Of a stretch of 64,000 nucleotides of DNA, positions 4,901-54,487 are shown one piece after another. The DNA comes from Macrostomum lignano. Its lineage: Eukaryota. Below the pieces are notes generated by a model. That model saw only the letters and a program-made list of their open reading frames with translations. It was not told the DNA's origin and did not search any database. A program made the translations under genes and the position numbers. Position 1 is the stretch's first letter. Each line of letters opens with the position of its first letter. Location: the NCBI GenBank assembly GCA_002269645.1, contig NIVC01000628.1, forward strand, positions 248,001 to 312,000. The letters run 5' to 3'.

Positions 4901-4972
4901 GTAAACAATTCAGTTGTGGGACATTTAATGTGAATGTCATTATCATGATTAATTAGCATCGCGTATTTCCAG
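4901..4972 (+). other. Putative short 5'UTR intron of the His-Me-finger gene
   Basis: GAG|GTAAAC donor at 4901 and TATTTCCAG|ATG acceptor directly before the start codon at 4973. Confidence 0.45.
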
Positions 4973-5323
4973 ATGGGCGCATCCTATACGCAGCAGCAGC
5001 CACCGCCTGACCTGCTGGCGTCATCTGCGCCATTGCCTTCGGCGGCTTCCGCCTCTGCTGGCCCGGCGGCGTCCACTGCTGCTGCGGCGGCAGCATCGGG
5101 GACATCGCACCATCACATTCAGCAGCAGCGGCGCAAGGCCTCCTGCCCGAAGCTAGGCGAGAACATCGTGATGCTGATCTGCCTAAGCCGGGTGCGCCGG
5201 ATGGGCGGCCGCTGGTACAGGGCCGTGTCTCACATGCGAACTGGGAAGAGGAAAAAGGAGAAAAAGCGACCGTATAGGCCGGCTGATTTTGATCGGATGA
5301 CCGAGGCGTCTAATGCGGCTATG
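4973..5323 (+). CDS. His-Me-finger/His-Cys-box domain protein (about 851 aa), coding exon 1
   Basis: ATG after acceptor; MGASYTQQQ...KLGENIVMLICLSRVRRMGGRWYRAVSHMRTGKRKKEKKRPY...SNAAM; donor ATG|GTGAGC at 5324, phase 0. Confidence 0.75.
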
Positions 5324-5465
5324 GTGAGCTGCGGTCTGGCTTATGCATACTGCATTTGTATAGCACTAGTTACTATAACGCTGAAATTCTGCTACATTCT
5401 GGTACTTGCTGGTTAATCATGGAGAATCGGCCTCTTAGTTACATAGAAAGCGCTCCCGTAGTAAC

Positions 5466-5879
5466 TTGGAAAATCGCCGTCCTAATCACTGGAAAACCGC
5501 TCTCCTAATCACTGGAAAATCGCTCTTCTAATCACTGGAAAATCGCCTTCTTAATCACTGGAAAATCGCCTTCCTAATCACTGGAAAATCGCTCTCCTAA
5601 TGACAGGAAAATCGCCCTCCTAATCACTGGAAAATCGCCCTCCTAATCACTGGAAAATCGTCTTCCTAATCACTGGAAAATCGCTCTTCTAATCACTGGA
5701 AAATCGCTCTTCTATTCACTGGAAAATCGCTCTCCTATCACTGGAAAATCGCCTTCCTAATCACAGGAAAAACGCCTTCCTAATCACAGGAAAACCTCCT
5801 TCCTAATCACAGGAAAACCGCCTTCCTAATCACAGGAAAAACGCCTTCCTAATCACTGGAAAATCGCCTTCCTAATCAC
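5466..5879. repeat. 23-bp minisatellite (CTAATCACTGGAAAATCGCCTTC)n, intronic
   Basis: About 18 tandem units read directly. Confidence 0.95.
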
Positions 5880-5920
5880 CCTCCAAAACACCTTTAAATT
5901 CATCATCGCGCAGCCTTCAG

Positions 5921-6440
5921 TTGATCCCGATTCCCGACCCGAACTCGCCGCAGGACATGTCCGAGACGGACCTGGCCGAGATCGTTGCCAACCTATTAAA
6001 AAAGGTATTCAAAGAGATTCAAGACGATTGCCGCGAGGCGTTCGTTCGAGCCTGGCTACGCGAAGACGACACCCGCTGCGTGCTGACCGTGCCGGACGGC
6101 AAGGGCAAGATGAAGCGAATTGACGGATTGCGCGGCTCAGACAAGGTCTGGCGGCTCGACACCTTAGTTGCTATGCTGTACCACGGCGTACCTATGGACA
6201 GCACCGATACGGGACTTCTAGTGCACAGGTGCGAAGATGAATTGTGCGTTAATCCGCGTCATCTCAGCTTCCAATGCAGCCCGGCTATGATGGCCGTTGC
6301 CATGGAGATGCTGCACGTTGCCGGCTACGACGTGACGCCCAGGCTGGCGGCTGCCGCGGCTGCCGACCCGTCCGGTAACGGGCGCTACTTTCAATTCACC
6401 TCGCCCTTCACAGTGGACGTCATCCGGCGGGAGATGAGCG
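5921..6440 (+). CDS. His-Me-finger/His-Cys-box domain protein, coding exon 2 (contains HRCEDELCVNPRHL zinc-binding loop)
   Basis: Acceptor GCCTTCAG|TTG, phase 0 matching exon 1; donor AGCG|GTGAGT at 6441, phase 1. HxCxxxxCxNPxHL motif at 6224-6265 plus an upstream Cys in DTRCVL. Confidence 0.88.
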
Positions 6441-6472
6441 GTGAGTTGAAGCCATTGCTTAATCCTCAAGTC

Positions 6473-7552
6473 CCTCAGTGAGGCCACCGGCTTCCCTCAG
6501 GCCCCTCAGTGAGGCCTCCGGTTTCCCTCAGACCCCTCAGTGAGGCCTCCGGCTTCCCTCAGACCCCTCAGTGAGGCCTCCGGCTTCCCTCAGACCCCTC
6601 AGTGAGGCCTCCGGCTTCCCTCAGACCCCTCAGTGACGCCACCGGCTTCCCTCAGACCCCTCAGTGAGGCCTCCGGCTTCCCTCAGACCCCTCAGTGAGG
6701 CCTCCGGCTTCCCTCAGACCCCTCAGTGAGGCTACCGGCTTCCCTCAGACCCCTCAGTGAGGCCTCCGGCTTCCCTCAGACCCTCAGTGAGGCTACCGGC
6801 TTCCCTCAGACCCCTCAGTGAGGCTACCGGCTTCCCTCAGACCCCTCAGTGAGGCCTCCGGCTTCTTTCAGACCCCTCAGTGAGGCCACCGGCTTCCCTC
6901 AGACCCCTCAGTGAGGCCTCCGGCTTCCCTCAGACCCTCAGTGAGGCCTCCGGCTTCCCTCAGACCCCTCAGTGAGGCCACCGGCTTCCCTCAGACCCCT
7001 CAGTGAGGCCTCCGGCTTCCCTCAGACCCTCAGTGAGGCCTCCGGCTTCCGTCAGACCCCTCAGTGAGGCCACCGGCTTCCCTCAGACCCCTCAGTGAGG
7101 CCACCGGCTTCCCTCAGACCCCTCAGTGAGGCCTCCGGCTTCCCTCAGACCCTCAGTGAGGCCTCCGGCTTCCCTCAGACCCCTCAGTGAGGCTACCGGC
7201 TTCCCTCAGACCCTCAGTGAGGCCTCCGGCTTCCCTCAGACCCTCAGTGAGGCCTCCGGCTTCCCCCAGACCCCTCAGTGAGGCCTCCGGCTTCCCTCAG
7301 ACCCCTCAGTGAGGCCACCGGCTTCCCTCAGACCCCTCAGTGAGGCCTCCGGCTTCCGTCAGACCCCTCAGTGAGGCCTCCGGCTTCCCTCAGACCCCTC
7401 AGTGAGGCCACCGGCTTCCCTCAGACCCCTCAGTGAGGCCACCGGCTTCCCTCAGACCCCTCAGTGAGGCCTCCGGCTTCCGTCAGACCCCTCAGTGAGG
7501 CCTCCGGCTTCCGTCAGACCCATCAGTGAGGCCTCCGGCTTCCCTCAGACCC
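6473..7552. repeat. 30-31-bp minisatellite (CAGTGAGGCCTCCGGCTTCCCTCAGACCCCT)n, intronic
   Basis: About 35 near-identical units starting about 30 nt after the donor. Confidence 0.97.
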
Positions 7553-8310
7553 TAAACCCGAATTCTGCATTGTCACAGTATTAACACTACATGTATACGC
7601 GTCCTTAGCCAAATTTATAGCAAAGGAGTGTAGGACTCTCGCTTTTATTCTTTGTTATAAATCATTGGCTATAGCGTGTGAACTAGCGGCACACCAAGGG
7701 GTGACAGGCATTGTGCTTAGGAAAAGCGCATACTCAAAAGGGTAGGCTAGGTAACTTTTTTTAGAAAAAATACCTGACGCTAGCATTTCAGCAGGTGTAA
7801 TATAACCGCCGCTAACGTTTCTATAGGCGGTATAAACACACAATTCCTGTTATTGCGGAACGGTTTGACTGTGTGGGTGAGGTGCGAGTTTAGCAGCTTT
7901 TTTAAGACTGTCGCATACCTGGCTCACTCGCGCCTTTCTCACTTGATTGACCTCTGCCCCCCTTCTTCCATTCCCCGCTCCCGACTTCATTGACCTCCCT
8001 ATAGCTGGCCTGCAGGTCAAGACTCGAGTCAAATATTTTTATTGCTTTATCTTTTTTGTTCGTTTGCCACAGCTTTAACCGAAGGTATTAGCGCGGTTAA
8101 CAATGCTTGGGTAGTTTTTTTGCATAGCGGCCTCTTTATTCGAATCTTACTCTATCGATTTTTTTCTTCTCTCTCTTTGTCCCCATTGTGCTCCCATGCC
8201 CAGGTTTAATTGAACTTTCTCTGAGGGGATTTCAGCCGGCCGTTTCTGAGTAACTAACTCATCTTTGTTCCCATTTCTAAGCGGACTAATCTGTTGAAGC
8301 TTTCAGTCTC

Positions 8311-10045
8311 TTTAAACACCGAGTTTAGCACCATTTAAAACACTGAGTTTAGTGCCCCCCAAACACAGTTTATCACCCTTTAAACACGGAGTTTAGCGCC
8401 CTTTTAACAGAGTTTAGCGCCATTTAAACACCGAGTTTAGCGCATTTTAAACACTGCGTTAAACACCCTTTAAACACCGAGTTTAGCGCATTTTAAACAC
8501 TGCGTTAAACACCCTTTAAACACCGAGTTTAGCACCATTTTAGACACTGAGTTTAGTGCCCTCCAAACACAGTTTATCACCCTTTAAACACCGAGTTTAG
8601 CACCATTTTAAACACTGAGTTTAGTGCCCTCCAAACACAGTTTATCACCCTTTAAACACCGAGTTTAGCACCATTTTAAACACTGAGTTTAGTGCCCTCC
8701 AAACACAGTTTATCACCCTTTAAACACCGAGTTTAGCGCCCTTTAAACAGAGTTTAGCGCCATTTAAACACCGAGTTTAGCGCATTTTAAACACTGCGTT
8801 AAACACCCTTACAACACCGAGTTTAGCACCATTTTAGACACTGAGTTTAGTGCCCTCCAAACACAGTTTATCACCCTTTAAACACGGAGTTTAGCGCCCT
8901 TTAAACGGAGTTTAGCGCCATTTAAACACCGAGTTTAGCGCATTTTAAACACTGCGTTAAACACCCTTTAAACACCGAGTTTAGCGCATTTTAAACACTG
9001 CGTTAAACACCCTTTAAACACCGAGTTTAGCACCATTTTAGACACTGAGTTTAGTGCCCTCCAAACACAGTTTATCACCCTTTAAACACGGAGTTTAGCG
9101 CCCTTTTAACAGAGTTTAGCGCCCTTTAAACAGAGTTTAGCGCCCTTTAAACAGAGTTTAGCGCCCTTTAAACAGAGTTTAGCGCCATTTAAACACCGAG
9201 TTTAGCGCATTTTAAACACTGCGTTAAACACCCTTTAAACACCGAGTTTAGCACCATTTTAAACACTGAGTTTAGTGCCCTCCAAACACAGTTTATCACC
9301 CTTTAAACATGGAGTTTAGCGCCCTTTAAACAGAGTTTAGCGCCATTTAAACACCGAGTTTAGCGCATTTTAAACACTTCGTTAAACACCCTTTAAACAC
9401 CGAGTTTAGCGCATTTTAAACAGTGCGTTAAACACCCTTTAAACACCGAGTTTAGCACCATTTTAGACACTGAGTTTAGTGCCCTCCAAACACAGTTTAT
9501 CACCCTTTTAACACGGAGTTTAGCGCCCTTTAAACACGGAGTTTAGCGCCCTTTAAACAGAGTTTAGCGCCCTTTAAACAGAGTTTAGCGCCCTTTAAAC
9601 AGAGTTTAGCGCCCTTTAAACAGAGTTTAGCGCCCTTTAAACAGAGTTTAGCGCCCTTTAAACAGAGTTTAGCGCCCTTTAAACAGAGTTTAGCGCCCTT
9701 TAAACAGAGTTTAGCGCCCTTTAAACAGAGTTTAGCGCCCTTTAAACAGAGTTTAGCGCCCTTTAAACGGAGTTTAGCGCCCTTTAAACAGAGTTTAGCG
9801 CCATTTAAACACTGAGTTTAGTGCCCTCCAAACACAGTTTATCACCCTTTAAACATGGAGTTTAGCGCCCTTTAAACAGAGTTTAGCGCCCTTTAAACAG
9901 AGTTTAGCGCCCTTTAAACGGAGTTTAGCGCCCTTTAAACAGAGTTTAGCGCCATTTAAACACCGAGTTTAGCGCTCTTTAAACACAGAATTTAGTGCCT
10001 ATTTAAACCAATAGTGTAGCACCCTTTTTCAACACCCGGGTTTAG
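8311..10045. repeat. 21-24-bp minisatellite (core GAGTTTAGCGCCCTTTAAACA) with higher-order structure
   Basis: Ordered recurring monomer variants, then a homogeneous monomer run at about 9540-9780. Confidence 0.95.
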
Positions 10046-10110
10046 CAGGCCGCCAAGAACCACCAATATTAGGGCTTATAAAACAGCAAGCGTGCTAAAG
10101 AAAATTGGCC
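10039..10110. repeat. Dispersed repeat, copy 2
   Basis: 37-bp identity to 1498-1534 plus shared downstream blocks. Confidence 0.8.
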
Positions 10111-10602
10111 AATATTATAGTGCTGACTGGCCATTTTCCTAGCTCTGTATTTCTGCGCCACCCCTCCCCCCCCCGCGGCTGACCCCCATGACTTGGCTGG
10201 CCACGCTGGCTGCATGACAAACCAAATATGGAAGGCAGTTATAGAAAAGCAGCTTGGATGTAGAAAATGGGTTAGTGCAGACTCCCAGTGTCAGTTATCA
10301 CTTGCCCCCTTAACTGGACTGTTTCCTGGCAACTGCGTTTTGCAAAGCCTGATATTGCGCGTGCATATTGCACTACTGTATCTGCATGCTGAATTCTTAT
10401 CTATGCTGGTTTGAAACCTGATGGCTTAAAATATATTATATACAATTTCTACCTGACATTAGTCTGACACAAGGATATCGTTTAAGGGTATTTTGGGATA
10501 CGCAGGTTTCTATTGCATAGCAGATATTGTAGCTTGATTGAATTGCATCTTAAGTATAAAAATATCGTATGAAAATTTTTACTATCAAACTTCCTTCCTT
10601 AA

Positions 10603-11200
10603 AAATCTTACCAATCTCACGCTGTGAATCTCCCTTGTCTCACTAAGAATCTCACCAATCTCATGCTAAGAATCTCACCAATCTCATGCTAAGAATCTCC
10701 CCAATCTCACGCTAAGAATCTCCCCGATCTCACGCTAAGAATCTCCCCGATCTCACGCTATGAATCTCCCAATCTCACGCTGTGAATCTCCCAATCTCAC
10801 GCTATGAATCTCCCTAATCTCGCGCTGTGAATCTCCCTAATCTCACGCTGATAATCTCCCCAATGTCACGCTATGAATCCCCAATGTCACGCTGTGAATC
10901 TCCCCAATCTCACGCTATGAATCTCCCCAATATCACGCTGTGAATCTCCCTTGCCTCATTGAGAATCTCCCTTGCCTCACTGAGAATCTCCCCAATCTCA
11001 CGCTGAGAATCTCACCAATCTCACCAATCTCACGGTGAGAATCTCACCAATCTCACGGTGAGAATCTCACCAATCTCACGGTGAGAATCTCACCAATATC
11101 ACGGTGAGAATCTCACCAATCTCACGCTGAGAATCTCCCCAATCTCACGCTGAGAATCTCCTTTACCTCACTGAGAATCGCCTTCATCTCACCAAAATCT
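10603..11200. repeat. About 22-bp degenerate minisatellite (AATCTCACCAATCTCACGCTGAG)n, intronic
   Basis: Tandem units read directly. Confidence 0.9.
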
Positions 11201-11260
11201 TACCAGTACCTCACTGACATCGCCCAGACGCCTTCACCCTACACCCCACCCCAATTCCAG

Positions 11261-11482
11261 AGTCCATGGCGCTGCCGAGGTCGGTGCTGGACCGCTATCA
11301 ACTATCAACCGACGACGCGGCCTACGTGCAGGACAATTTTCCGGAGACCATGTCCACCTACAGGCGGCTGCTTGCAGGCGACGGCGGCGGCGGCAGCTCC
11401 GGCTCCGTCAGCAGAGCTTCAACTGTCGGCGCTGCCGGATCAGATGTCAGCAGTACTGCAGGCATCGGTGGATCTGTACAGC

Positions 11483-11525
<43 letters not shown>

Positions 11526-11815
11526 AGACCGATCCTTTCTAGCCTCATTGTCCTCATCTGCGGCCGGCCTGTTGCTCAAATCCGAGGCCGTGTCTCCGGC
11601 TTCGTGCAGTTCCGCCTCGGCCACGCCAAGCTCTGCCGCTTCAGCCGGCGGCGGCGGCGGCGTCAAACGGCCGCCGTCAGAGTCGCCAACTAACGCGCAG
11701 ATGCCGTTTAAAAAGCGCAGACCAATGAGCAGTACGGATTTTACTCCCGCGGCTGCAGTCTCCGGATCTGTTTACGGAGCTGCGGTCTGCGCTGCTGGAT
11801 TCACTCCAATTACTA
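11261..11815 (+). CDS. His-Me-finger domain protein, coding exon 3 (low complexity, (CAG)12 polyQ, NLS-like PFKKRRP)
   Basis: Acceptor CCAATTCCAG|AG; phase 1 gives G+AG=Glu then SMALPRSVLDRYQL; donor ACTA|GTGAGT at 11816, phase 1. Confidence 0.8.
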
Positions 11816-11864
11816 GTGAGTGCTAACTGCTCTGCTCAGTTTCTCTTCCCCTCGGTATTTGGAC

Positions 11865-12800
11865 CTGTGTCTTCCCCTCTGTGTCTTCCCCTTCTGTCTC
11901 CCCCTTCTGTCTTCCCCTCTGTGTCTTCCCCTTCTGTCTTCCCCTTCTGTGTCTTCCCCTCTGTGTCCTCCCCTTCTGTCTTCCCCTTCTGTCTTCCCCT
12001 CTGCGTCTTCCCCTTCTGTCTTCCCCTTCTGTCTTCCCCTTCTGTCTTCCCCTTCTGTCTTCCCCTTCTGTCTTCCCCTCTGTGTCTTCCCCTTCTGTCT
12101 TCCCCTTCTGTCTTCCCCTTCTGTCTTCCCCTTCTGTCTTCCCCTTCTGTCTTCCCCTTCTGTCTTCCCCTCTGTGTCTTCCCCTTCTGTCTTCCCCTTC
12201 TGTCTTCCCCTTCTGTCTTCCCCTTCTGTCTTCCCCTTCTGTCTTCCCCTTCTGTCTTCCCCTCTGTGTCTTCCCCTTCTGTCTTCCCCTTCTGTCTTCC
12301 CCTCTGTGTCTTCCCCTTCTGTCTTCCCCTCTGTGTCTTCCCCTTCTGTCTTCCCCTTCTGTCTTCCCCTCTGTGTCTTCCCCTTCTGTCTTCCCCTTCT
12401 GTCTTCCCTCTGTGTCTTCCTTTCTGTGTCTTCTCCTCTGTGTCTTCCTTTCTGTGTCTTCCCCTCTGTGTCTTCCCCTTTGTGTCTTCCCCTTCTGTCT
12501 TCCCCTCTGTGTCTTCCCCTCTGTGTCTTCCCCTTTGTGTCTTCCCCTTCTGTCTTCCCCTCTGTGTCTTCCCCTTTGTGTCTTCTCCTCTGTATCTTCC
12601 CCTTTGTGTCTTCTCCTCTGTGTCTTCCTTTCTGTGTCTTTCCCTCTGTTTCTTCCTTTCTGTGTCTTCCCCTCTGTGTCTTCCTTTCTGTGCCTTCCCC
12701 TCTGTCTTCCCCTCCGTGTCTTCCCCTCTGTGTCTCGCCCTCTGTGTCTTCCCCTTCTACGTCATCACCTTCTGTGCCTCCCCCTTCTCTGTCTTCCCCT
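11865..12800. repeat. 13-15-bp pyrimidine-rich minisatellite (CTGTCTTCCCCTT)n, intronic
   Basis: Tandem units; explains the three overlapping L/P/S/C/V/F ORFs. Confidence 0.97.
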
Positions 12801-12930
12801 TGCAGTCTTCACTCCTGTGTTCCACCTCTGTGCCTGCATGTATCCCAATTCCAGCTCTTTGAACTTTTTAAGACAATTTTTACGAACTGAAATACCTTCA
12901 CAAATGCATATAATTTGATTAAAATTTAAG

Positions 12931-13214
12931 GCGCCCTCTTCGATCGGCGGCCTTCAAGCGACGAGGGCGACGCCGCCAAACTGGGCGCCAGTTCCGCCGG
13001 TCAGCCGCCACCTTTGCCGCCTCCTCCGGCGCCGCCGCCGCTGCCGTCGCACCAGCTGCAGCAACAGCAGTCTCAGTCGCATTTCGATTCGCACCACCAG
13101 AGCCACACTGAGGACGAAATAGCCGAGATTAACCGGCCCGCTGTGGCCGCGGACGCCGCTGACGAGCGCGAAGCTGCCGCTACGCTGTGCGCCTTGCGGA
13201 ATTCGCCTATTTGT
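12931..13214 (+). CDS. His-Me-finger domain protein, coding exon 4 (Pro/Gln-rich, EREAAATLCAL motif)
   Basis: Acceptor AAATTTAAG|GC; phase 1 (A+GC=Ser) runs into the frame of ORF 13014; donor TGT|GTGAGT at 13215, phase 0. Confidence 0.72.
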
Positions 13215-13276
13215 GTGAGTTGCTTACTTTCTATTTTGCAGAAAGATTTGAGTATGGTAGCTTTGGTTCCCCGATT

Positions 13277-13424
13277 CTGATTCCCCATCCCAGCCTCATC
13301 CCGATTCTGCATCCCAGCCTCATCCCGATTCTCCATCCCAGCCTCATCCCGATTCTCCATCCCAGCCTCATCCCGATTCCCCATCCCAGCCTCATCCCGA
13401 TTCTCCATCCCAGCCTCATTTCGA
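13277..13424. repeat. 24-bp minisatellite (CCCAGCCTCATCCCGATTCTCCAT)n, about 6 units, intronic
   Basis: Tandem units read directly. Confidence 0.92.
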
Positions 13425-13466
13425 TTCCGCATCATGCTCGTCCGCTGTCATCTCTGTGACCCGCAG

Positions 13467-14312
13467 CCCGGTGAGTACTATTCAGTATTCTCTGAGGGCC
13501 GCCTCGCCTCCGTAGCCTCAGGCGCCTCAAATGTCGCTTCTTCGGCGGGCGCAATGCCGGCGCCGCCGTTGCCGCGCCCTCGGCCGCTGTTGCAACGCGT
13601 CGACGGCACCCTGGCCGAGCGGGACCACGCCGCAACCGCAGCGGCCGCCGGCTCGTCGTCAAACCCGTCGGAAAGCATGACGACATCATCGATGTCGCTG
13701 CAGTCAATGTCGTCGTATTCCTCTTCGTCATCGTCAATATTTATGCCGTCGGTTCAGGCCGCGGTGTCGCACACCGGCGTGTTCCGGCCGATTCTGCCGC
13801 CGTCGGCATCAGCCGCTCTCTACTGGCAGGGCAGCGGCGGAAGCGGCGGCGGAGGCGGCGCCGCAGCGATGCGGGGCTCCACGACGCCAGTGGGCCAGAG
13901 TCCCCTAATCGCCGGCCGCAACGATACGCCAACTGCGATCCGGCTGATATTGGAGATGCAGAGCTCGCAGAGCGGCGGCGGAGGAAGCGGCGGTGGCGCC
14001 GGTGGCGCAGGCGACGCGGCTGTTTCCGCTGCCGGCGCTGCGCGTCGTCTTCAATCGTCGGCTGCTGGCGTGGCGCCAAGCATCGATCAGTTCGAGCACA
14101 TGCTGCGAGCGACCACTGGCGCCACGCCCACCTGGCCCTACGCGACAGGAGTTGGTGGCAGCGGCGGCGGCAGTGGCACCGAAAGCAGCCCGGTGAAGCA
14201 GCTCTACACCGCTGCGTCGGCAACTGCCGCTGCAGCGTCGGCGGCTTCGACATCCGCAGCCAAGTTGAAGTCTTCGCAGGCGTCGGCAGAGGAACAGCGC
14301 CGAGTGCATTGA
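13467..14312 (+). CDS. His-Me-finger domain protein, terminal coding exon 5 (Ser/Ala/Gly-rich, disordered)
   Basis: Acceptor TCTCTGTGACCCGCAG|CCC, phase 0; open to TGA at 14310-14312. Joined exons total 2556 nt = 852 codons including the stop. Confidence 0.78.
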   Translation, partial: PGEYYSVFSEGRLASVASGASNVASSAGAMPAPPLPRPRPLLQRVDGTLAERDHAATAAAAGSSSNPSESMTTSSMSLQSMSSYSSSSSSIFMPSVQAAVSHTGVFRPILPPSASAALYWQGSGGSGGGGGAAAMRGSTTPVGQSPLIAGRNDTPTAIRLILEMQSSQSGGGGSGGGAGGAGDAAVSAAGAARRLQSSAAGVAPSIDQFEHMLRATTGATPTWPYATGVGGSGGGSGTESSPVKQLYTAASATAAAASAASTSAAKLKSSQASAEEQRRVH

Positions 14313-46847: not shown

Positions 46848-48127
46848 GTGAGTGTGTGCCTGCGTACGTATCCGCGCGCTTGTATGCCTGCTCAGGGGAG
46901 TCGGCGGAATGGGCAGTAATGCCTCTCGCCGGTTGTTTGCCAATGTCGCTTAAAGTGCGCCAGGGTGCACACAACCCCCCTGCCTCTAATAAAAAAATAG
47001 TCCAGGGCCAAAGCACCTTAGGGCCAAAGATTGCCAGCCACTGCTACTTTTCTATGGCGTATCCTTAAAACAATCTAATTCTTAGCGATTAGTACTTTTA
47101 TTATTTATGTTCCTGACTTCGCTTGCTCTGGGATTGAAGTGAAATACCGACCGAAAAACCCATAGAAAATCTTATTTAAACTACTTTTATTTTGCGGGAT
47201 GTATTCAGATAAATCCCGGAGCCATACTTGTATGTCTATGGTTGAAGTTGGGGATGGGGGTGTGGGGGCGAAGCCCCCACATTCTTACCATAGACAAAAT
47301 TTCATTAAGAAATTTCTCGAGTCACGAAGGAAGAGAAGAGAGAAGCTCGCTTATTTAGACACATACAATAATCCTTGCAATTTGTCCGGGAAAGTGATCG
47401 ATTAAATTCGGCAAAATAAAATCTATGTCAATAACCTCCCTGAAGGTGAGCTTTAAAGTGGTTTAACGCACAATAAACAATTGGAGTCACAGTGATTGAC
47501 TTGTACTGCAACTGGACTATTCGTATAATTTATTGGGTTCTTTTTTTAGAAACATCATATGCATCTTTTATGCGTGAATAGAAAATTACGAATACCAACA
47601 TACAGTACCAACTCGATCCCCTCCTTCTCTCTCTCTCTATCTGTCTTATTCCATCAACTTAATACCCCTGGATATTGTGCAATCCATCCAGCCAGCTCCC
47701 CCGGCAACCGGAGCCAGATAGCCACCTGGCAGCCAGGAGTCTGACAGAAGATCTGGGGAGCGAGCCGGGTATTGGGAACTGGCCAGACTGGCTTTTGCCT
47801 CGGCTCTTTTCCTGCGCACCTGGGAAATCTGAGGAAATACAAATTACTGCATTGAGGATTCTTAATTCTGGCAGAAAAAACAGAGGGATAAATTGGATCC
47901 TTAAGCCAACAGCTCGGGGGATGGAGCAGCAGTTGGGAGCAATTAATAACCAAGCTGGCGGTGCAATAAATTCTGGGATATACTGTGGACATCTTGAAGA
48001 ACGTTGTTTTTTCAAACTTCTGAAACCTTCCTGACAGATTAGATAGCGAGCTGCTGCTGGTATGACTAAACCGGGAACTTAATTGCGTATTGGTACTGAT
48101 AAATCAGATAGCAGTAGCCTCACCATG

Positions 48128-48455
48128 CCGACCAATCAGAGATCAGTAAGTAGCTTTAAGCATACCGACCGATCAGAGATCAGTAAGTAGCCTTAAGCAT
48201 ACCGACCGATCAGAGATCAGTAAGTAGCCTTAAGCATACCGACCAATCAGAGATCAGTAAGTAGCCTTAAGCATACCGACCAATCAGAGATCAGTAAGTA
48301 GCTTTAAGCATACCGACCAATCAGAGATCAGTAAGTAGCCTTAAGCATACCGACCAATCAGAGATCAGTAAGTAGCCTTAAGCATACCGACCAATCAGAG
48401 ATCAGTAAGTAGCTTTAAGCATACCGACCAATCAGAGTTCAGTAAGTAGCCTTAA
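48128..48455. repeat. 37-bp minisatellite (GCATACCGACCAATCAGAGATCAGTAAGTAGCCTTAA)n, left half
   Basis: About 9 units, interrupted by the piggyBac insertion at the TTAA of a unit. Confidence 0.97.
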
Positions 48456-50843
48456 CCACTTCGCGCCCAAGCTTGGTTCTGTAAGATCGCTTAAAAGCCC
48501 AAAGGCCTGCAGAGCAGTCCATAGACAAATTTGTCTTTTTTTCTGAATCGAGTGCACACCCTAAAAGCCCAGAAGTAAAGTATACCACAGAGTTTTTCTG
48601 CTAGCTCCTGTTCAAACCTTCCTACTCACAAATGGCTTCTACGCGCCCGAAAAGGACAGCTAAAAGTGATGCCTTGCGCAGACTGGGACTCGATTCCGAT
48701 TCGGATGACGCTTTATCAAGCGATGAGTCGACGGTTTTTGAGTCAGAAACGGAGTCGGAAAGCATGGATCCAGAAACTGATCAGAGCCAAGATGAGGCGG
48801 CCGCGGAATGGGTTGAAGTAGCCCCTGGAAGTGACAACTCGTTTGACCACGACCGGGTGCCGGAATTCCGAGGGTTTTCGACCATCAATCCAAGCATCGA
48901 TCTGCCAGAAAATCCAGACGAAAGTATGGCGGAATTTTTATCAATCTTCCTGACTGAAGCGTTTCTCACCAGTCTTGTCACATGGACCAATGAGAGAATG
49001 TGGTTGTCAGTCAGGGAGTTTCAGCAGGAGAGTGCAGAAACTGGCGAGGAAGAGTTGCCTTCTGGACTGTCTGCTCTTAAACCATGCTGTGTGGCCGAGA
49101 TGAAAAAGTTTCTGGGCATGGTGCTCTTCATGGGCATCAACAGCAAGCCGACCATACGCCACTACTGGTCCACAGACGTCATGTATCGGAATCCATATTT
49201 TCAGCAAGCCGAGAGCCTTCCCCGTTGGCGATTTCTTCAGCTACTGGCCTACTTCCGGTGCTACGACTGCCGAGAGTTCGATATCAACGACCCACTGTGC
49301 AAAGTAAGGCCTTTTCTGGACTTGATTAGCCGAATTTGTCGCGAAACCTATCGACCAGAGCAGGATGTCGCCATCAATGAGACGCTGATTCTATACAAGG
49401 GGAGACTTCTGCTGAAGCAGTATATTCCAAGCAAGAAGGCAAAGTACGGCATCAAACTGTATTGTCTGACTGAGTCCACGACGGGATACCTGTGGAATTT
49501 CCTGCTGCATTCTGTTGAGGCCGAACACGCAACCTTCGGTGCCGGTCTCCAATGCGATGAGCTCTCCATGAGCGAACGAGTCGTTGTTGAGCTTAGCCGC
49601 GAACTACTGGGTGAAGGATACCACATATACACGGATAGTTGGTTTACATCACACAGATTGGCTATCTACTTGTTTGAAAAAAAGGCCTTGCTCACCGGGA
49701 CTGTTCGAAAGGATCGTGGAATCCCGAGAGAATTGCAAGAAAAATTAGTGGTTGCTCCGGGTCAGGGCTTCATGAGGTGCAATCAGACACTCGCTATCAA
49801 GCTAGCAGACAGAAAGGCCTCGGGAACAAAGGTTGTCTACCTTCTGGACACAAGCATCCCTGCCGCTTGCACTGATGTTCGCAGAGTTCGTCGCGGTGGT
49901 CAAGTTGATCAAATTCCGAAGCCAACGGCTGTCATCCAGTACAATCGCAACATGGGCGGTGTTGATCGACTTGATGCGTCCGTGCATCTCTACCATCCAA
50001 ATCGTAAGTCCTACAAATGGTTCCAGAAAGTCGCGTTTCACCTGATTCTCACGCTTGTACGAAACGCTTGGACGCTGTACAAGAAATGTGGTGGGACAGC
50101 CAAATTTTTGACTTTCCTAGAGAATAGTATCAAGACGCTGATCCGCGACTCAGGACCGGGACGCGCTCGGCCACCGACTCAGGTTCCAGCCCCGATGCAG
50201 GCTAACCGTCCAATTCATTCACCGATGAGACTCCCAGCAACGGAAGCCCAGGCTCGCCCAAGCAAACGATGCCGAATGTGCTCTTTGAAACCTGACGTTC
50301 CAGCTAAGAAGACAGTATTTTGCTGCAGTCACTGTCCCGGACATCCTGGTCTCTGTCCAGATCCATGCTTCAGGATCTGGCACGAGACACATTGAAGTCC
50401 CACGAGCGATCCTGCATTGGCGTCTCCTAACTTGAACCCTGTTACACTTTTCTTTTCATGTCCTTGTTTTGTTTGGAACCATGCAGTTAAATTTTGTATT
50501 TGTTTAATACTAGTTATACTAATACTAATACTATACTAATACTAATACTAATACTCGTAGGTCAGTAGTGAGGAGATTAAAATTTAATACGACCATAAAT
50601 TTGTGCATCACCTCATGTTTTCACTGTGCACGCTTATTTCACATTTAACATTTGAGTGAAAACATAACGGAAATGCATAATGCAGGGCTTCTTTAAATTA
50701 ATCATGACCTGCACAGCAGGCCATACTGGGCACTTGCTTTAGTGACTGGGAGATGGTTTTTCATGCCATAGACATTTTTCAATCTCTGGGTTTTTGAGCC
50801 GTTTCGGTATGGCCTGCAGTGCAGGCCTTTGGCTTCCAAATGG
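48456..50843 (+). mobile_element. Full-length piggyBac-superfamily DNA transposon (2388 bp)
   Basis: TTAA TSD at 48452-48455 and 50844-50847. Ends CCACTT... and ...AAATGG. A 25-bp inverted repeat (22/25) lies at 48499-48523 and 50808-50832. Single transposase ORF. Confidence 0.95.
48632..50395 (+). CDS. piggyBac transposase (PGBD4-like, DDE_Tnp_1_7 type), 587 aa, first catalytic Asp replaced by Asn
   Basis: Acidic N-terminus; AINETLILYKGR...KQYIPSK..KYGIK (usually DE); YTDSWFTS; YNRNMGGVDRLD; C-terminal Cys-rich domain CRMC...CSHC...LC..CFRIWH. Confidence 0.95.
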   Translation: MASTRPKRTAKSDALRRLGLDSDSDDALSSDESTVFESETESESMDPETDQSQDEAAAEWVEVAPGSDNSFDHDRVPEFRGFSTINPSIDLPENPDESMAEFLSIFLTEAFLTSLVTWTNERMWLSVREFQQESAETGEEELPSGLSALKPCCVAEMKKFLGMVLFMGINSKPTIRHYWSTDVMYRNPYFQQAESLPRWRFLQLLAYFRCYDCREFDINDPLCKVRPFLDLISRICRETYRPEQDVAINETLILYKGRLLLKQYIPSKKAKYGIKLYCLTESTTGYLWNFLLHSVEAEHATFGAGLQCDELSMSERVVVELSRELLGEGYHIYTDSWFTSHRLAIYLFEKKALLTGTVRKDRGIPRELQEKLVVAPGQGFMRCNQTLAIKLADRKASGTKVVYLLDTSIPAACTDVRRVRRGGQVDQIPKPTAVIQYNRNMGGVDRLDASVHLYHPNRKSYKWFQKVAFHLILTLVRNAWTLYKKCGGTAKFLTFLENSIKTLIRDSGPGRARPPTQVPAPMQANRPIHSPMRLPATEAQARPSKRCRMCSLKPDVPAKKTVFCCSHCPGHPGLCPDPCFRIWHETH

Positions 50844-51313
50844 TTAAGCATACCGACCAATCAGAGATCAGTAAGTAGCCTTAAGCATACCGACCAATCA
50901 GAGATCAGTAAGTAGCCTTAAACATACCGTTCAATCAGAGATCAGTAAGTAGCCTTAAGCATACCGACCAATCAGAGATCAGTAAGTAGCCTTAAGCATA
51001 CCGACCAATCAGAGATCAGTAAGTAGCCTTAAGCATACCGACCAATCAGAGATCAGTAAGTAGCCTTAAACATACCGTTCAATCAGAGATCAGTAAGTAG
51101 CCTTAAGCATACCGACCAATCAGAGATCAGTAAGTAGCCTTAAGCATACCGACCAATCAGAGATCAGTAAGTAGCTTTAAGCATACCGACCAATCAGAGT
51201 TCAGTAAGTAGCCTTAAGCATACCGACCAATCAGAGATCAGTAAGTAGCCTTAAGCATACCGACCAATCAGAGATCAGTAAGTAGCCTTAAGCATACCGT
51301 TCAATCAGAGATC
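50844..51313. repeat. 37-bp minisatellite, right half
   Basis: About 12 units resuming in register after the element. Confidence 0.97.
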
Positions 51314-52035
51314 AAACAGCCAAATCCTGCCAGATACACTGCTTAATATTATCTTCCTGACCGATCAGAGGTCCGTAGACCTGTCGCGCTGATTATCGGA
51401 ACAAAGTAAGTAAAAAATTAGGAATTGTGCTAATAAGTGCTTTTGTAGACTGACTGCCAGCTACATAATCCTGTAATAATCTCTCCAAGTTAAGGATAAA
51501 AAACAAGAGACAGCAGATCCAACTAGAATAATTTCAAAATGCTTCAATAACCATTGATTTTAGATTTTATAAAGTTATAAAGCATACTAAATTGAAGTCG
51601 ACGACCCCCCATCCGTATATATTGAAGACACCGGGACGGGTTTATGACCAGCAGCAGATAGAATTAATTCCATCTTTACTGTGTCTCTGCTACACTGAGA
51701 AATTTAGATTTAAAGGCCACACGTGTGTTTTTATAATCCGAGAGTTCAATCGCTTGGCAGCTCAGTCGGGGATGGGGCGCTTGGGATTTTTCTGCTTAAC
51801 ACCGGGGCGCCAGCGAGGCGCCTGCTAAGCAGTACCCAGAGCAAGGCTCCGCACGCGGCCTCTGCATCAATAATGCAGCTTCAGCCAGTGGCTGTTCCCA
51901 TAATCTTACAGTGCTGAGATATTGCGATTCCACTGAGGGGGGTCCTCTGTAGGTAGGTTAGTTTAAGGATGCCAGGCTTGATTGGCAAGCAGTCTTGGGC
52001 CTCCATAAACCATTGCTTCAATCATTTAGGGTATA

Positions 52036-53805
52036 TTAGCAATCTATTCTATTTTGTCAACCATGCAGGGTAGATTATCAATCCATTCTATTCTGTCAAC
52101 CATGCAGAGTAGATTAGCAATCCATTCTATTCTGTCAACCATGCAGAGTAGATTAGCAATCCATTCTATTCTATTAACCATGCAGGATAGATTATCAATC
52201 CATTCTATTCTGTCAACCATGCAGAGTAGATTAGCAATCCATTCTATTCTATTAACCATGCAGGATAGATTATCAATCCATTCTATTCTGTCAACCATGC
52301 AGAGTAGATTAGCAATCCATTCTATTCTGTCAACCATGCAGGGTAGATTAGCAATCCATTCAATTCTGTCAACCATGCACGGTAGATTAGCAATCCATTC
52401 TATTCTGTCAACCATGCAGAGTAGATTAGCAATCCATTCTATTCTGTCAACCATGCAGGGTAGATTATCAATCCATTCTATTCTGTCAACCATGCAGGGT
52501 AGATTATCAATCCATTCTATTCTGTCAACCATGCAGAGTAGATTAGCAATCCATTCTATTCTGTCAACCATGCAGAGTAGATTAGCAATCCATTCTATTC
52601 TATTAACCATGCAGGATAGATTATCAATCCATTCTATTCTGTCAACCATGCAGAGTAGATTAGCAATCCATTCTATTCTGTCAACCATGCAGGGTAGATT
52701 AGCAATCCATTCTATTCTATTAACCATGCAGAGTAGATTAGCAATCCATTCTATTCTGTCAACCATGCAGAGTAGATTAGCAATCCATTCTATTCTATTA
52801 ACCATGCAGGATAGATAATCAATCCATTCTATTCTGTCAACCATGCAGAGTAGATTAGCAATCCATTCTATTCTGTCAACCATGCAGGGTAGATTAGCAA
52901 TCCATTCAATTCTGTCAACCATGCACGGTAGATTAGCAATCCATTCTATTCTGTCAACCATGCAGAGTAGATTAGCAATCCATTCTATTCTGTCAACCAT
53001 GCAGGGTAGATTATCAATCCATTCTATTCTGTCAACCATGCAGGGTAGATTAGCAATCCATTCAATTCTGTCAACCATGCACGGTAGATTAGCAATCCAT
53101 TCTATTCTGTCAACCATGCAGAGTAGATTAGCAATCCATTCTATTCTGTCAACCATGCACGGTAGATTAGCAATCCATTCTATTCTGTCAACCATGCAGA
53201 GTAGATTAGCAATCCATTCTATTCTGTCAACCATGCAGGGTAGATTATCAATCCATTCTATTCTGTCAACCATGCAGGGTAGATTAGCAATCCATTCAAT
53301 TCTGTCAACCATGCACGGTAGATTAGCAATCCATTCTATTCTGTCAACCATGCAGAGTAGATTAGCAATCCATACTATTCTGTCAACCATGCAGGATAGA
53401 TTATCAATCCATTCTATTCTGTCAACCATGCAGAGTAGATTAGCAATCCATTCAATTCTGTCAACCATGCAGGGTAGATTATCAATCCATTCTATTCTGT
53501 CAACCATGCAGAGTAGATTAGCAATCCATTCTATTCTGTCAACCATGCAGGGTAGATTATCAATCCATTCTATTCTGTCAACCATGCAGGGTAGATTAGC
53601 AATCCATTCAATTCTGTCAACCATGCACGGTAGATTAGCAATCCATTCTATTCTGTCAACCATGCAGAGTAGATTAGCAATCCATTCTATTCTGTCAACC
53701 ATGCAGGGTAGATTAGCAATCCATTCTATTCTGTCAACCATGCAGAGTAGATTAGCAATCCATTCTATTCTGTCAACCATGCACGGTAGATTAGCAATCC
53801 ATTTC
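52036..53805. repeat. 39-bp minisatellite (AATCCATTCTATTCTGTCAACCATGCAGAGTAGATTAGC)n
   Basis: About 45 units; gives the 13-aa-repeat ORFs in the track. Confidence 0.98.
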
Positions 53806-53834
53806 AACGACAATCCCACTGGTCACCATTGCAG

Positions 53835-54487
53835 AGGATGACATCATCGTCATAGCAGTGTCAGCAGGTGTGGTCTCCCTGCTAATCGTATCCACCTGCG
53901 TCATGTTCGCCGCCGTGGTGCGGGTCCGCCGTCGTCGCAGCCGCCGCCATCGGGAGGAACGGCGCGGCGGCCAGCAACAAGTTGACAAGCTGCAGAATTT
54001 TTTAGCAGCCGATGAGCCGTCAGCTCTGACAGCGGAAGAGCTGGCCAGTCTGCAGCAGCAGCAGCAGCAGCAGCAACCAGGGATCTGCTTTTTGAGTCCA
54101 GCGGTTTCGCTTGTTGCGCATCACCGCCAGCAGCAGCCGTCGCCTCAGTCGCCTCTGCCTCAGCAGCAGCAGCAGCAGCCGTCGCCTCAGTCGCCTCTGC
54201 CTCAGCAGCAGATTCTTCTCCGTCCAATCCTGGCTCGTTCGGCCTTGACCACCCTTGGCGCAGTATCGCCGCAGGGTTCGCTGCAGTCGTCCTCGGACGC
54301 GCCGAGCGGCTACGCCACTGTCAGCAACAGCAGCGGCGGCACAGTTCGGTTCAGCCAGTTCAGCGATTTGTACTTTTATTCGCCAAACTCCTGCCCAATC
54401 AGAGCCAGCGGAGGGCTGGAGGGAGTCAGCGAAGAGGCCGGATATCCGCCCAGGGAGTGTCGTATGTGTGACCCTCATCAGTGTTAG
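53835..54487 (+). CDS. eva-1: EVA-1-like protein, terminal exon 7 (transmembrane helix and cytoplasmic tail)
   Basis: GTCACCATTGCAG|AG, phase 1; DDIIVIAVSAGVVSLLIVSTCVMFAAVV followed by the RVRRRRSRR stop-transfer; stop TAG. The seven exons total 1734 nt = 578 codons including the stop. Confidence 0.8.

What the first reader, a model, noticed from the sequence alone, without database searches (positions are those of the whole stretch)
4973..14312. Spliced host gene built on a homing-endonuclease-type His-Me finger: candidate domesticated nuclease-fold regulator
Seen: five exons join in consistent phase (0,1,1,0) to an intact ORF of about 851 aa. The N-terminal globular block (about aa 55-330) contains C170...LVAMLYHGVP...H219-R-C221-EDEL-C226-VNPR-H231-L. 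Established: this is the His-Cys-box/His-Me-finger zinc loop (I-PpoI SHLCHNTRCHNPLHL; phage HNH HxCxxxxCVNPxHL), normally found in group I intron homing endonucleases and phage nucleases. The Smad MH1 domain is an accepted precedent for such a fold turned into a DNA-binding domain. Inference: an intron-rich cellular gene with no transposon ends, plus about 500 aa of disordered Q/S/A/G/P sequence, looks like a lineage-specific transcription or chromatin regulator domesticated from a selfish nuclease. I cannot assign it to a named animal family.
Basis: partly seen in the sequence, partly recalled or inferred. Interest (0 to 1): 0.85.

Follow-up and report, generated by a model that had tools for sequence, protein, structure and literature searches.

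The report
Flatworm Nuclear Factor I gene
This is an ordinary, already catalogued gene of the flatworm Macrostomum lignano for a divergent Nuclear Factor I (NFI/CTF) transcription factor; its nuclease-like zinc loop is the known ancient heritage of the MH1-type DNA-binding fold, not a recent capture of a selfish nuclease.

Summary
The sequence observation holds. Five GT..AG exons on the + strand join into one intact ORF, and the Cys/His loop is at the stated residues. A transcript-derived GenBank model (BOX15_Mlig013766g2) confirms three junctions. It moves the intron-1 acceptor 33 nt downstream (5954, not 5921), giving 840 aa, not 851.

The protein is not an orphan. Its N-terminal block matches solved human NFI-A/B/C/X DNA-binding domains (phmmer E 7e-21). 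An AlphaFold model (pLDDT 83) hits only NFI structures significantly (TM 0.82-0.87). The zinc ligands (C170, C221, C226, H231) and both base-reading residues (R183, K192) are conserved.

It belongs to a divergent flatworm NFI clade (trematodes, monogeneans, cestodes) that Pfam models miss. UniProt already labels this clade "CTF/NF-I domain-containing".

The likely function is a zinc-stabilised, dimeric TTGGC-type site-specific transcription factor with a disordered effector tail. Interest is low.

The parts
4973..5323 (+). Exon 1. It holds the ATG at 4973 (in-frame TGA at 4946-4948), a low-complexity N-terminus (aa 1-54), and then the helices that correspond to the NFI 'pre-N'/antenna region (aa ~60-117). 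This region includes R89 and R93, the equivalents of NFI-X R38 and K42.
   Evidence: sequence, GT donor at 5324. (the region is conserved in paralogues and in trematode/monogenean homologues). (residue mapping). (in-register profile match to the canonical pre-N region, E 0.007). P0003 also starts MGA....
5324..5953 (+). 66% of it is a 23-bp minisatellite (5467-5879, 18 copies).
   Evidence: The acceptor ccgcag|GACATG at 5953/5954 is the one used by the transcript-derived model P0170.
5954..6440 (+). Exon 2. It encodes the MH1-like core of the NFI DNA-binding domain, the helix at the position of the NFI dimerisation helix alpha5, and a flatworm-conserved tail that ends ...YFQFTSPFTVDVIRREMS.
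   Evidence: phmmer to NFI-C/A/B/X structures, E 7e-21 to 2e-18. (Foldseek). (36%/32% identity to the Schistosoma and Cichlidogyrus homologues).
6107..6154 (+). DNA-reading beta-hairpin (K180-R195, reader numbering). R183 (6116-6118) and K192 (6143-6145) are the equivalents of the base-contacting NFI-X R116 and K125. G186 replaces the redox-sensitive Cys-3.
   Evidence: alignment A2 mapped onto NFI-X numbering. Residue roles are taken from PMC12630593.
6224..6265 (+). Zinc loop H219-R-C221-EDEL-C226-VNPR-H231-L. C221, C226 and H231, together with C170 (6077-6079), are the CCCH zinc ligands of NFI/MH1. H219 sits at the position of the I-PpoI general base His98.
   Evidence: CCCH is invariant in all 44 aligned sequences that cover the site. 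(register with I-PpoI). (I-PpoI sequence verified against 1a73).
6441..11260 (+). Intron 2 (4820 bp). 70% is tandem repeat: a 31-bp array at 6472-7552, a 21-bp array at 8310-10027 and a 23/46-bp array at 10600-11192.
   Evidence: The junction is confirmed by P0170 and by homology that runs across it to the trematode proteins.
11261..11815 (+). Exon 3. It holds the end of the flatworm-conserved block (to about aa 330, nt ~11379), then disordered sequence with a poly-Gln run (CAG repeat 11479-11522) and a KKRR basic cluster (possible NLS).
11816..12930 (+). Intron 3. 85% of it is a CT-rich 13-bp minisatellite (11865-12810).
12931..13214 (+). Exon 4: Pro/Gln-rich disordered region.
   Evidence: identical to P0170.
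13215..13466 (+). Intron 4. 59% of it is a 24-bp minisatellite (13279-13427).
13467..14312 (+). Exon 5: Ser/Ala/Gly-rich disordered C-terminus, with the stop codon TGA at 14310-14312.

Best explanation
The locus is the Macrostomum lignano gene BOX15_Mlig013766g2. [quoted passage not shown]

Shown here:
- The first ~260 structured residues have the NFI DNA-binding-domain sequence and predicted fold: helical antenna, MH1-like core, and a helix at the alpha5 position.
- The four zinc ligands are intact (C170, C221, C226, H231).
- Both residues that read the bases of the TGGC half-site in human NFI-X are intact (R183 and K192 = R116 and K125).
- Most phosphate-contacting hairpin residues are also kept.

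Inferred:
- Two protomers bind neighbouring TTGGC/GCCAA half-sites.
- The ~520-residue Ser/Ala/Gly/Pro/Gln-rich tail (66% S/A/G/P/Q/T) recruits co-regulators, like the disordered proline-rich C-terminal regions of vertebrate NFI.
- The nuclease-like His-Cys loop is inherited from the ancient His-Me-finger ancestor of all MH1-type domains. It serves as a structural zinc site, not a catalytic one.

The dimer interface (alpha5 and the E143-K173 salt bridge) and the redox-sensitive Cys-3 are changed across the whole flatworm clade. Half-site spacing preference and redox control may therefore differ from vertebrate NFI.
For: -: phmmer against PDB sequences finds NFI-C/A/B/X DNA-binding domains at E 7e-21 to 2e-18 and nothing else significant.
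- 427 relatives are found among 1.84 billion representative proteins. The closest tier is flatworm proteins aligned over the whole 274-aa block (E 1e-41 to 2e-28). The next tier is canonical NFI (E ~1e-20).
- sources name these proteins 'CTF/NF-I domain-containing protein', 'Nuclear factor 1 A-type' and CBR-NFI-1.
- the AF2 model (pLDDT 83, pTM 0.81) gives 20 significant PDB matches, all of them NFI DBDs. Target-normalised TM is 0.82-0.87 and rmsd 2.4-2.8 A over 163-176 columns.
- CCCH, R116, K125, R38, K78, K113, R121, D124, R128, D130 and T145 are all conserved. K42 and R115 are kept as basic residues (R93, K182).
- a transcript-derived GenBank model matches the exons.
- (PMC12630593): these supply the residue roles in NFI-X.
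- (PMC13637464): C. elegans NFI-1 binds the same consensus as the mammalian NFIs. This supports transferring the specificity to invertebrates. C. briggsae NFI-1 shares the window's A123->S change.
Against: - No Pfam NFI model is passed. MH1 (PF03165) scores 19.2 bits, below its cut-off of 25. There is no hit to NfI_DNAbd_pre-N (PF10524) or CTF_NFI (PF00859). The same holds for the trematode and monogenean homologues.
- Outside the MH1 core, similarity to canonical NFI is weak. Profile-profile E is 0.007 for the antenna and 0.08 for the tail.
- Several NFI-X positions are changed: Cys-3 -> Gly, R74 -> Asn, Q110 -> Gly, and the dimer-helix residues L175/Y178/L179 -> A/A/V. The E143-K173 salt bridge becomes D...S.
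- The AF2 alignment contained canonical NFI sequences, so the model leans towards their fold.
- No DNA-binding, expression or phenotype data exist for any flatworm member. A literature search for Smp_152430 found nothing.
Confidence: 0.93

Rival explanations
1. One reading: a lineage-specific regulator recently domesticated from a selfish His-Me/HNH homing endonuclease, belonging to no named animal family.
For: - The loop H-x-C-x4-C-x-N-P-x-H-L matches the I-PpoI His-Cys box in register.
- The viral fold search returns mainly phage HNH nucleases at E 4e-4 to 0.1.
- I-PpoI is the first non-NFI family in the PDB fold search, but at a non-significant E of 2.5.
Against: - The match to NFI is about 20 orders of magnitude stronger.
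- Homologues occur across flatworms, nematodes, arthropods and vertebrates.
- There is no Pfam zf-His_Me_endon or HNH_3 hit.
- The nuclease-to-MH1 transition is an ancient, already described event (PMC5714182).
Confidence: 0.02
2. The flatworm NFI-like protein keeps, or has regained, a residual metal-dependent DNA-nicking activity. It would use H219, which sits at the position of the I-PpoI general base His98 and is conserved in the flatworm clade but absent from canonical NFI.
For: -: H219 is conserved as VH(R/T)C in Macrostomum, trematodes and a monogenean, whereas canonical NFI has K/S/P/Q there.
- The C-x4-C spacing equals that of I-PpoI. Most canonical NFIs have C-x5-C; some nematode sequences also have C-x4-C.
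Against: - By ungapped extension of the register, the position of the I-PpoI metal ligand Asn119 is Met240 (inference).
- MH1-type domains are classified as catalytically dead.
- The hhalign probability is only 3.4%.
- The rest of the domain is a complete NFI DNA reader.
Confidence: 0.02
3. A Smad-family protein (MH1 domain of the TGF-beta pathway) rather than an NFI.
For: The only Pfam hit is MH1 (E 0.0015).
Against: - There is no MH2 domain hit.
- All significant sequence and fold matches are NFI. No Smad structure appears even at E<=10.
- The NFI-specific antenna region is present.
Confidence: 0.01
4. A decaying or non-functional paralogue among the several Macrostomum NFI-like copies.
For: - At least three NFI-like loci exist in M. 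lignano at 67-78% identity.
- The genome is neopolyploid and repeat-rich (PMC5730564).
Against: - The 840-codon ORF is intact across five exons.
- All zinc and base-reading residues are kept.
- A transcript-derived model exists.
- The second assembly differs by only one Gln and one I/V.
Confidence: 0.02

Closest known systems
Human Nuclear Factor I proteins NFI-A/B/C/X (solved DBDs 7QQD, 9QKY, 9XVD, 9JH2, 9W7S and others)
   Same: - The DBD architecture is the same: antenna helices plus an MH1-like core.
- The CCCH zinc site is kept.
- The beta-hairpin keeps the base-reading Arg and Lys and the invariant DKVWRLD and STD motifs.
- The C-terminal effector region is disordered.
- Predicted-fold TM is 0.82-0.87.
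   Different: - Identity over the fold alignment is only ~31%.
- It fails the Pfam pre-N, MH1 and CTF_NFI thresholds.
- The basic RKRKYFKKHEKR stretch is only 4/12 identical.
- Cys-3 is replaced by Gly.
- The zinc loop is 3 residues shorter (C-x4-C).
- The alpha5 dimer-swap residues and the E143-K173 salt bridge are replaced.
- The DBD is split by an intron.
- The tail is Ser/Ala/Gly/Gln-rich rather than classically proline-rich.
Flatworm 'CTF/NF-I domain-containing' proteins: Schistosoma mansoni Smp_152430, and proteins from Clonorchis/Opisthorchis, Paragonimus, Trichobilharzia, Echinostoma, Cichlidogyrus, Hymenolepis, Mesocestoides and Protopolystoma
   Same: - They align over the whole ~270-aa block, including the N-terminal helices and the tail after the zinc loop (32-43% identity, E 1e-41 to 2e-28).
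- They share the V-H-x-C-x4-C loop, R74->N, A123->S, and the changed alpha5. Gly also replaces Cys-3 in all of them except the monogenean, which keeps Cys.
- None has a Pfam hit.
   Different: - The parasite proteins are mostly longer (655-1484 aa) and have unrelated low-complexity tails.
- None has been studied experimentally, as far as the searched literature shows.
Caenorhabditis NFI-1
   Same: - It is an invertebrate NFI.
- It also lacks Cys-3 (Ile) and also has Ser at the A123 position.
- It is reported to bind the mammalian consensus (PMC13637464).
   Different: - It keeps clear Pfam pre-N and MH1 matches.
- It is a single-copy gene in the worm, whereas M. lignano has several paralogues.
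Smad MH1 domain
   Same: It shares the superfamily, the CCCH zinc site and a beta-hairpin that reads the major groove (PMC12630593). The only Pfam hit of the window protein is the MH1 model.
   Different: Smads have no antenna domain. The window protein has no MH2 domain, and no Smad structure was retrieved in the fold search.
I-PpoI His-Cys box homing endonuclease and phage HNH (HNH_3 / I-HmuI type) nucleases
   Same: - The zinc-loop register is H-x-C-x4-C-x-N-P-x-H-L.
- There are weak fold echoes: I-PpoI at E 2.5 in PDB and phage HNH at E 4e-4 to 0.1 in BFVD.
- The deep common ancestry is already accepted in the literature.
   Different: - No significant sequence or Pfam match exists.
- The metal-ligand Asn is not evident.
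- The gene is not encoded in a mobile intron or a phage.
- The rest of the domain is an NFI-type DNA reader.

Membership tests
Nuclear Factor I / CTF | Significant sequence similarity of the DNA-binding domain to characterised NFI proteins | tested here: met
   E 7e-21 to 2e-18 to NFI-C/A/B/X PDB chains; canonical NFI tier at E ~1e-20; sources name the proteins CTF/NF-I.
Nuclear Factor I / CTF | Fold: MH1-like core plus helical antenna | tested here: met
   the model has pLDDT 83. The top 20 PDB hits are all NFI DBDs, with TM(target) 0.82-0.87 covering 163-176 of ~160-173 residues. Caveat: the input alignment included canonical NFIs.
Nuclear Factor I / CTF | CCCH zinc ligands (NFI-X C103, C156, C162, H167) | tested here: met
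   the equivalents are C170, C221, C226 and H231. The columns are invariant in alignment A2.
Nuclear Factor I / CTF | Base-reading residues R116 and K125 and the surrounding beta-hairpin | tested here: met
   R183 and K192 are conserved. K113, R121, D124, R128 and D130 are also kept. R115->K, A123->S and Q110->G are changed.
Nuclear Factor I / CTF | N-terminal 'pre-N' region (Pfam PF10524, basic RKRKYFKKHEKR stretch) | tested here: inconclusive
   no Pfam hit; the aligned stretch is only 4/12 identical; the profile-profile match is in register but weak (E 0.007). W and R38 are conserved.
Nuclear Factor I / CTF | Pfam MH1 (PF03165) above the gathering score | tested here: not met
   19.2 bits against a cut-off of 25 (E 0.0015). 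Canonical NFIs score 38-47 bits.
Nuclear Factor I / CTF | CTF_NFI C-terminal region (PF00859) | tested here: not met
   no hit. Only a 20-residue in-register echo, YFQFTSPFTVDVIRREM against FQDSFVTSGVFSVTELVRV (E 0.08).
Nuclear Factor I / CTF | Oxidation-sensitive Cys-3 (NFI-X C119) | tested here: not met
   it is Gly186 here and Gly in the trematode homologues. The monogenean keeps Cys. It is Ile in C. briggsae NFI-1, so it is not universal outside vertebrates.
Nuclear Factor I / CTF | C-terminal alpha5 helix that mediates the DNA-dependent dimer swap | tested here: inconclusive
   a helix is predicted at model residues 173-185; the interface residues differ (L175/Y178/L179 -> A/A/V; K173 -> S; E143 -> D).
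Nuclear Factor I / CTF | Binds TTGGC(N5)GCCAA or half-sites as a dimer | not testable with these tools
   This needs EMSA, SELEX or DAP-seq.
His-Me finger / HNH homing endonucleases (PF05551 zf-His_Me_endon, HNH_3, I-PpoI) | Profile match to the family models | tested here: not met
   no hit at E<=1.
His-Me finger / HNH homing endonucleases (PF05551 zf-His_Me_endon, HNH_3, I-PpoI) | His-Cys box zinc loop in register, with a His at the general-base position | tested here: met
   window H219..Q235 aligns without gaps to I-PpoI H98..E114. The aligned pairs are H/H, C/C, C/C, NP/NP and H/H. The statistics are weak (E 0.013, probability 3.4%).
His-Me finger / HNH homing endonucleases (PF05551 zf-His_Me_endon, HNH_3, I-PpoI) | Metal-binding Asn/His on the helix of the beta-beta-alpha-Me motif (I-PpoI N119) | tested here: inconclusive
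   The alignment stops at I-PpoI E114. Ungapped extension puts Met240 at N119 (inference).
His-Me finger / HNH homing endonucleases (PF05551 zf-His_Me_endon, HNH_3, I-PpoI) | Significant fold similarity to a nuclease | tested here: inconclusive
   I-PpoI at E 2.5 and TM 0.17-0.25; phage HNH at best E 4e-4, with TM 0.2-0.5 and high rmsd. This is a remote echo only.
His-Me finger / HNH homing endonucleases (PF05551 zf-His_Me_endon, HNH_3, I-PpoI) | Encoded within a mobile intron, intein or phage genome | tested here: not met
   It is a five-exon nuclear gene with spliceosomal GT..AG introns.
Smad | MH2 domain C-terminal to MH1 | tested here: not met
   no MH2 hit; the C-terminal 521 aa are low-complexity.

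The most novel reading that the evidence does not exclude
The platyhelminth NFI clade is a separately evolving NFI subfamily. It preserved or re-created the full I-PpoI-type His-Cys box, including the general-base histidine (H219), and remodelled the dimer helix. It might therefore combine site-specific binding with residual DNA nicking, or at least read a different half-site arrangement from canonical NFI.
Probability: 0.03. Interest if true: 0.7.

Novelty: already known. Interest (0 to 1): 0.15.

Why it matters
It matters little beyond annotation. The finding shows that a reader working from raw sequence can rediscover the accepted link between His-Me finger nucleases and MH1-type DNA-binding domains. 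The gene itself, however, is a catalogued NFI family member.

Two modest points remain:
- Flatworm NFIs are divergent enough that Pfam models miss them, and some are deposited as 'hypothetical protein', 'unnamed protein product' or 'uncharacterized protein'. This includes the window gene's own GenBank record and S. mansoni Smp_152430. A clade-specific profile would fix the annotation in parasitic flatworms.
- The clade's altered dimer helix, lost redox cysteine and I-PpoI-like loop spacing offer a natural variant set for testing the recently solved NFI-DNA recognition mechanism. M. lignano is a tractable, transgenic, regenerating model for such tests.

Tried and rejected
- First AF2 run on a 4-sequence alignment (A1): pLDDT 39.8, unusable. 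It was replaced by a 44-sequence alignment.
- Pfam scan for zf-His_Me_endon, HNH_3, CTF_NFI and pre-N: no hits.
- Exact-sequence look-up of paralogue P0002 to obtain its genomic locus and intron positions: not on record.
- Literature search for Smp_152430, for Macrostomum NFI and for planarian NFI: nothing relevant. The 'nfi' hits were NFIL3 or unrelated.
- BLASTP of the C-terminal 520 aa against trematode and monogenean homologues: only low-complexity noise, so no conserved effector motif could be defined.
- Smad and active-nuclease readings: considered and rejected (see rivals).
- Whether flatworms also keep a canonical NFI next to this clade: not tested. I ran no further search on it.
- True 5' end: not resolved. 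Three possibilities remain:
  1. The genomic ATG at 4973.
  2. A spliced-leader acceptor at 4972/4973. TTCCAG|ATG fits the published [T/C]TNCAG trans-splice motif.
  3. A site at 4999/5000, where the GenBank 'partial' CDS starts. There the ATG that ends the M. lignano spliced leader would be in frame.

Full report
**Observation.**
- The five proposed segments on the + strand are all bounded by AG...GT(GAG) and join into 2556 nt with a single terminal stop. The intron phases are 0,1,1,0.
- The Cys/His residues sit exactly where stated: C170 at 6077-6079, H219 at 6224-6226, C221 at 6230-6232, C226 at 6245-6247 and H231 at 6260-6262.
- The frame is not a by-product of composition. Shuffles of exon 3 or exon 5 stay open in about 0.2% of trials. 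GC3 is uniformly 0.65-0.73. Exons are essentially free of the tandem repeats that fill 59-85% of every intron.

**Origin and gene model.**
- The window is Macrostomum lignano. It is 99.4% identical over 5.5 kb to contig NIVC01001797.1 of assembly GCA_002269645.1.
- That contig carries the gene BOX15_Mlig013766g2 (P0170, 830 aa, 'hypothetical protein, partial'). The annotation of this assembly was built from RNA-seq-guided transcript assembly (PMC5730564).
- P0170 equals the window CDS built from 4973-5323, 5954-6440, 11261-11815, 12931-13214 and 13467-14312. The only differences are 9 missing N-terminal residues, one Gln and one I/V.
- A spliced transcript model therefore exists. The intron-1 acceptor is 33 nt further downstream (ccgcag|GACATG), giving 840 aa.
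- Two paralogous M. lignano proteins also read AAM|DM.. and AAM|VM.. across this junction.

**What the protein is.**
- Pfam gives only a sub-threshold MH1 hit (19.2 bits against a cut-off of 25) and no zf-His_Me_endon, HNH, CTF_NFI or pre-N hit.
- A direct phmmer search of PDB sequences is unambiguous. Nine distinct NFI-A/B/C/X DNA-binding-domain chains score E 7e-21 to 2e-18, and the next hits are noise.
- An exhaustive phmmer search of 1.84 billion representative proteins finds 427 relatives in three tiers:
  1. Macrostomum paralogues.
  2. Flatworm proteins aligned over the entire 274-aa block at 36-43% identity (E 1e-41 to 2e-28).
  3. Canonical NFIs aligned over the MH1 core only (E ~1e-20).
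- The second tier comes from Clonorchis/Opisthorchis, Schistosoma mansoni (Smp_152430), Trichobilharzia, Paragonimus, Echinostoma, the monogeneans Cichlidogyrus and Protopolystoma, and the cestodes Hymenolepis and Mesocestoides. UniProt labels several of them, and the Macrostomum proteins, 'CTF/NF-I domain-containing protein' or 'Nuclear factor 1 A-type'.
- None of the flatworm proteins has a Pfam hit, whereas nematode and other NFIs hit pre-N and MH1 clearly.

**Structure.**
- A 4-sequence alignment gave a useless model. A 44-sequence alignment gave pLDDT 83 and pTM 0.81.
- Foldseek against the PDB returns 20 significant matches, all NFI DNA-binding domains. E is 3e-10 to 4e-8, target-normalised TM is 0.82-0.87 and rmsd is 2.4-2.8 A over 163-176 columns. 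That covers the whole NFI DBD, including antenna and alpha5.
- The next family is I-PpoI, at a non-significant E of 2.5.
- Against predicted viral structures the hits are almost exclusively phage HNH nucleases, but weak (best E 4e-4, TM 0.2-0.5, large rmsd).
- Caveat: the alignment used for folding contained canonical NFIs.

**Mechanistic residues.** The residue roles come from the NFI-X crystal and cryo-EM structures (PMC12630593) mapped through alignment A2.
- Zinc ligands C103/C156/C162/H167 correspond to C170/C221/C226/H231.
- The two base-reading residues R116 and K125 correspond to R183 and K192.
- R38, K78, K113, R121, D124, R128, D130 and T145 are all conserved.
- Changed across the flatworm clade: Cys-3 (C119) to Gly (the monogenean keeps Cys; the nematode has Ile), R74 to Asn, Q110 to Gly/Ala, A123 to Ser (as in C. 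briggsae NFI-1), the zinc loop shortened to C-x4-C, and the dimer-swap helix residues L175/Y178/L179 to A/A/V (Macrostomum) or V/V/V (parasites). The E143-K173 salt-bridge pair is also lost.
- The most likely mechanism is therefore NFI-like. A structural zinc site positions a beta-hairpin that reads TGGC half-sites in the major groove, two protomers bind per site, and a ~520-aa disordered S/A/G/P/Q-rich tail (66% of residues) acts as effector region.
- The fold and the conserved residues are shown. DNA specificity, dimerisation and regulatory activity are inferred. The remodelled alpha5 leaves the preferred half-site spacing open.

**The nuclease idea.**
- The I-PpoI sequence I recalled was verified as identical to 1a73.
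- hhalign of the NFI-core profile against it aligns window H219-RCEDELCVNPRHLSFQ without gaps to I-PpoI H98-LCHNTRCHNPLHLCWE (17 columns, 41% identity, E 0.013, probability 3.4%).
- The flatworm clade even carries a His at the general-base position, which canonical NFI lacks.
- This relationship is already in the literature. MH1 is group 16 of the His-Me finger superfamily, described as a modified endonuclease that lost catalysis but kept DNA binding (PMC5714182, citing Grishin 2001). NFI's DBD is an MH1-like fold (PMC12630593; PMC13637464).
- NFI genes occur throughout animals. The 'domestication' is therefore ancient and shared, not lineage-specific.
- By ungapped extension, the position of the I-PpoI metal ligand N119 is a Met here (inference), so catalysis is unlikely.

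**Comparison and novelty.**
- The gene works like, and is a member of, NFI/CTF. It meets the tests for sequence, fold, zinc site and base-reading residues. It fails or is inconclusive on the Pfam pre-N/MH1/CTF_NFI thresholds, Cys-3 and the alpha5 interface, which marks it as a divergent flatworm branch.
- It is not a Smad (no MH2) and not a His-Me nuclease family member (no profile match, not in a mobile element).
- The locus is already deposited, and its close relatives are auto-annotated as CTF/NF-I. I therefore rate it already known, with low interest (0.15).
- The only mildly novel angle is the clade-wide remodelling of the loop and the dimer helix.

**Not resolved.**
- The exact 5' end. 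TTCCAG|ATG at 4972/4973 fits the published M. lignano trans-splice acceptor motif [T/C]TNCAG. The GenBank partial CDS starts at 5000, right after CAG, where the ATG that ends the spliced leader would be in frame (PMC8629364).
- Whether flatworms also keep a canonical NFI.
- Any expression or phenotype data.

Noticed in passing
window 48632-50395 (+), with 48113-48455 and 50844-51314: An intact 587-aa piggyBac-type transposase ORF (Pfam DDE_Tnp_1_7 at E 1e-63, plus the zf-Tnp_2 C-terminal zinc finger). It is flanked on both sides by tandem arrays of the same 37-bp unit (TTAAGCATACCGACCAATCAGAGATCAGTAAGTAGCC). It may be an active or recently active element with repetitive sub-terminal regions.
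   Followed up: partly
window 1-64000; introns at 5324-5953, 6441-11260, 11816-12930 and 13215-13466: 43.6% of the window is tandem repeat by TRF. Each of the four NFI introns is 59-85% minisatellite, and each has its own unit (23 bp; 31, 21 and 23/46 bp; 13 bp; 24 bp). The exons are 0-8% repeat.
   Followed up: partly
window ~1597-2000 against L001 5112-7000 (NIVC01001797.1): The GenBank assembly carries about 1.5 kb of extra sequence upstream of the gene, including a 91-aa gene call with an HTH_48 (mariner-type) domain. This sequence is absent from the window. It is an insertion/deletion polymorphism of a transposon fragment between assemblies or haplotypes.
   Followed up: no
window 4967-5000: [quoted passage not shown] One is TTCCAG|ATG at 4972/4973, which matches the published [T/C]TNCAG motif. 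The other is CAGCAGCAG|CCA at 4999/5000, exactly where the GenBank 'partial' CDS begins. The M. lignano spliced leader ends in ATG and would be in frame at the second site.
   Followed up: partly
window 6224-6265; alignment A2: The whole flatworm NFI clade has V-H-x-C-x4-C-V-x-P-x-H. This spacing is identical to the I-PpoI His-Cys box and includes a His at the catalytic-base position. Most canonical NFIs have C-x5-C (some nematode NFIs also have C-x4-C), and none has the His.
   Followed up: partly
proteins P0001, P0002, P0003 and P0170 (M. lignano): M. lignano has at least three NFI-like loci at 67-78% identity, whereas C. elegans and Drosophila have one. That is too divergent to be the recent whole-genome duplication alone. 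UniProt entry A0A1I8FBQ4 (P0001) is a faulty model of the window gene: it translates the intron-1 minisatellite and contains frame-shifted stretches.
   Followed up: partly
window 53795-54484 (+): A 230-codon open frame with a hydrophobic transmembrane-like segment followed by a run of Arg. It has a weak, sub-threshold Pfam hit to the neurotransmitter-gated ion-channel transmembrane region (E 0.008). It may be a terminal exon of a membrane-protein gene and lies next to a 39-bp repeat array at 52028-53803.
   Followed up: no
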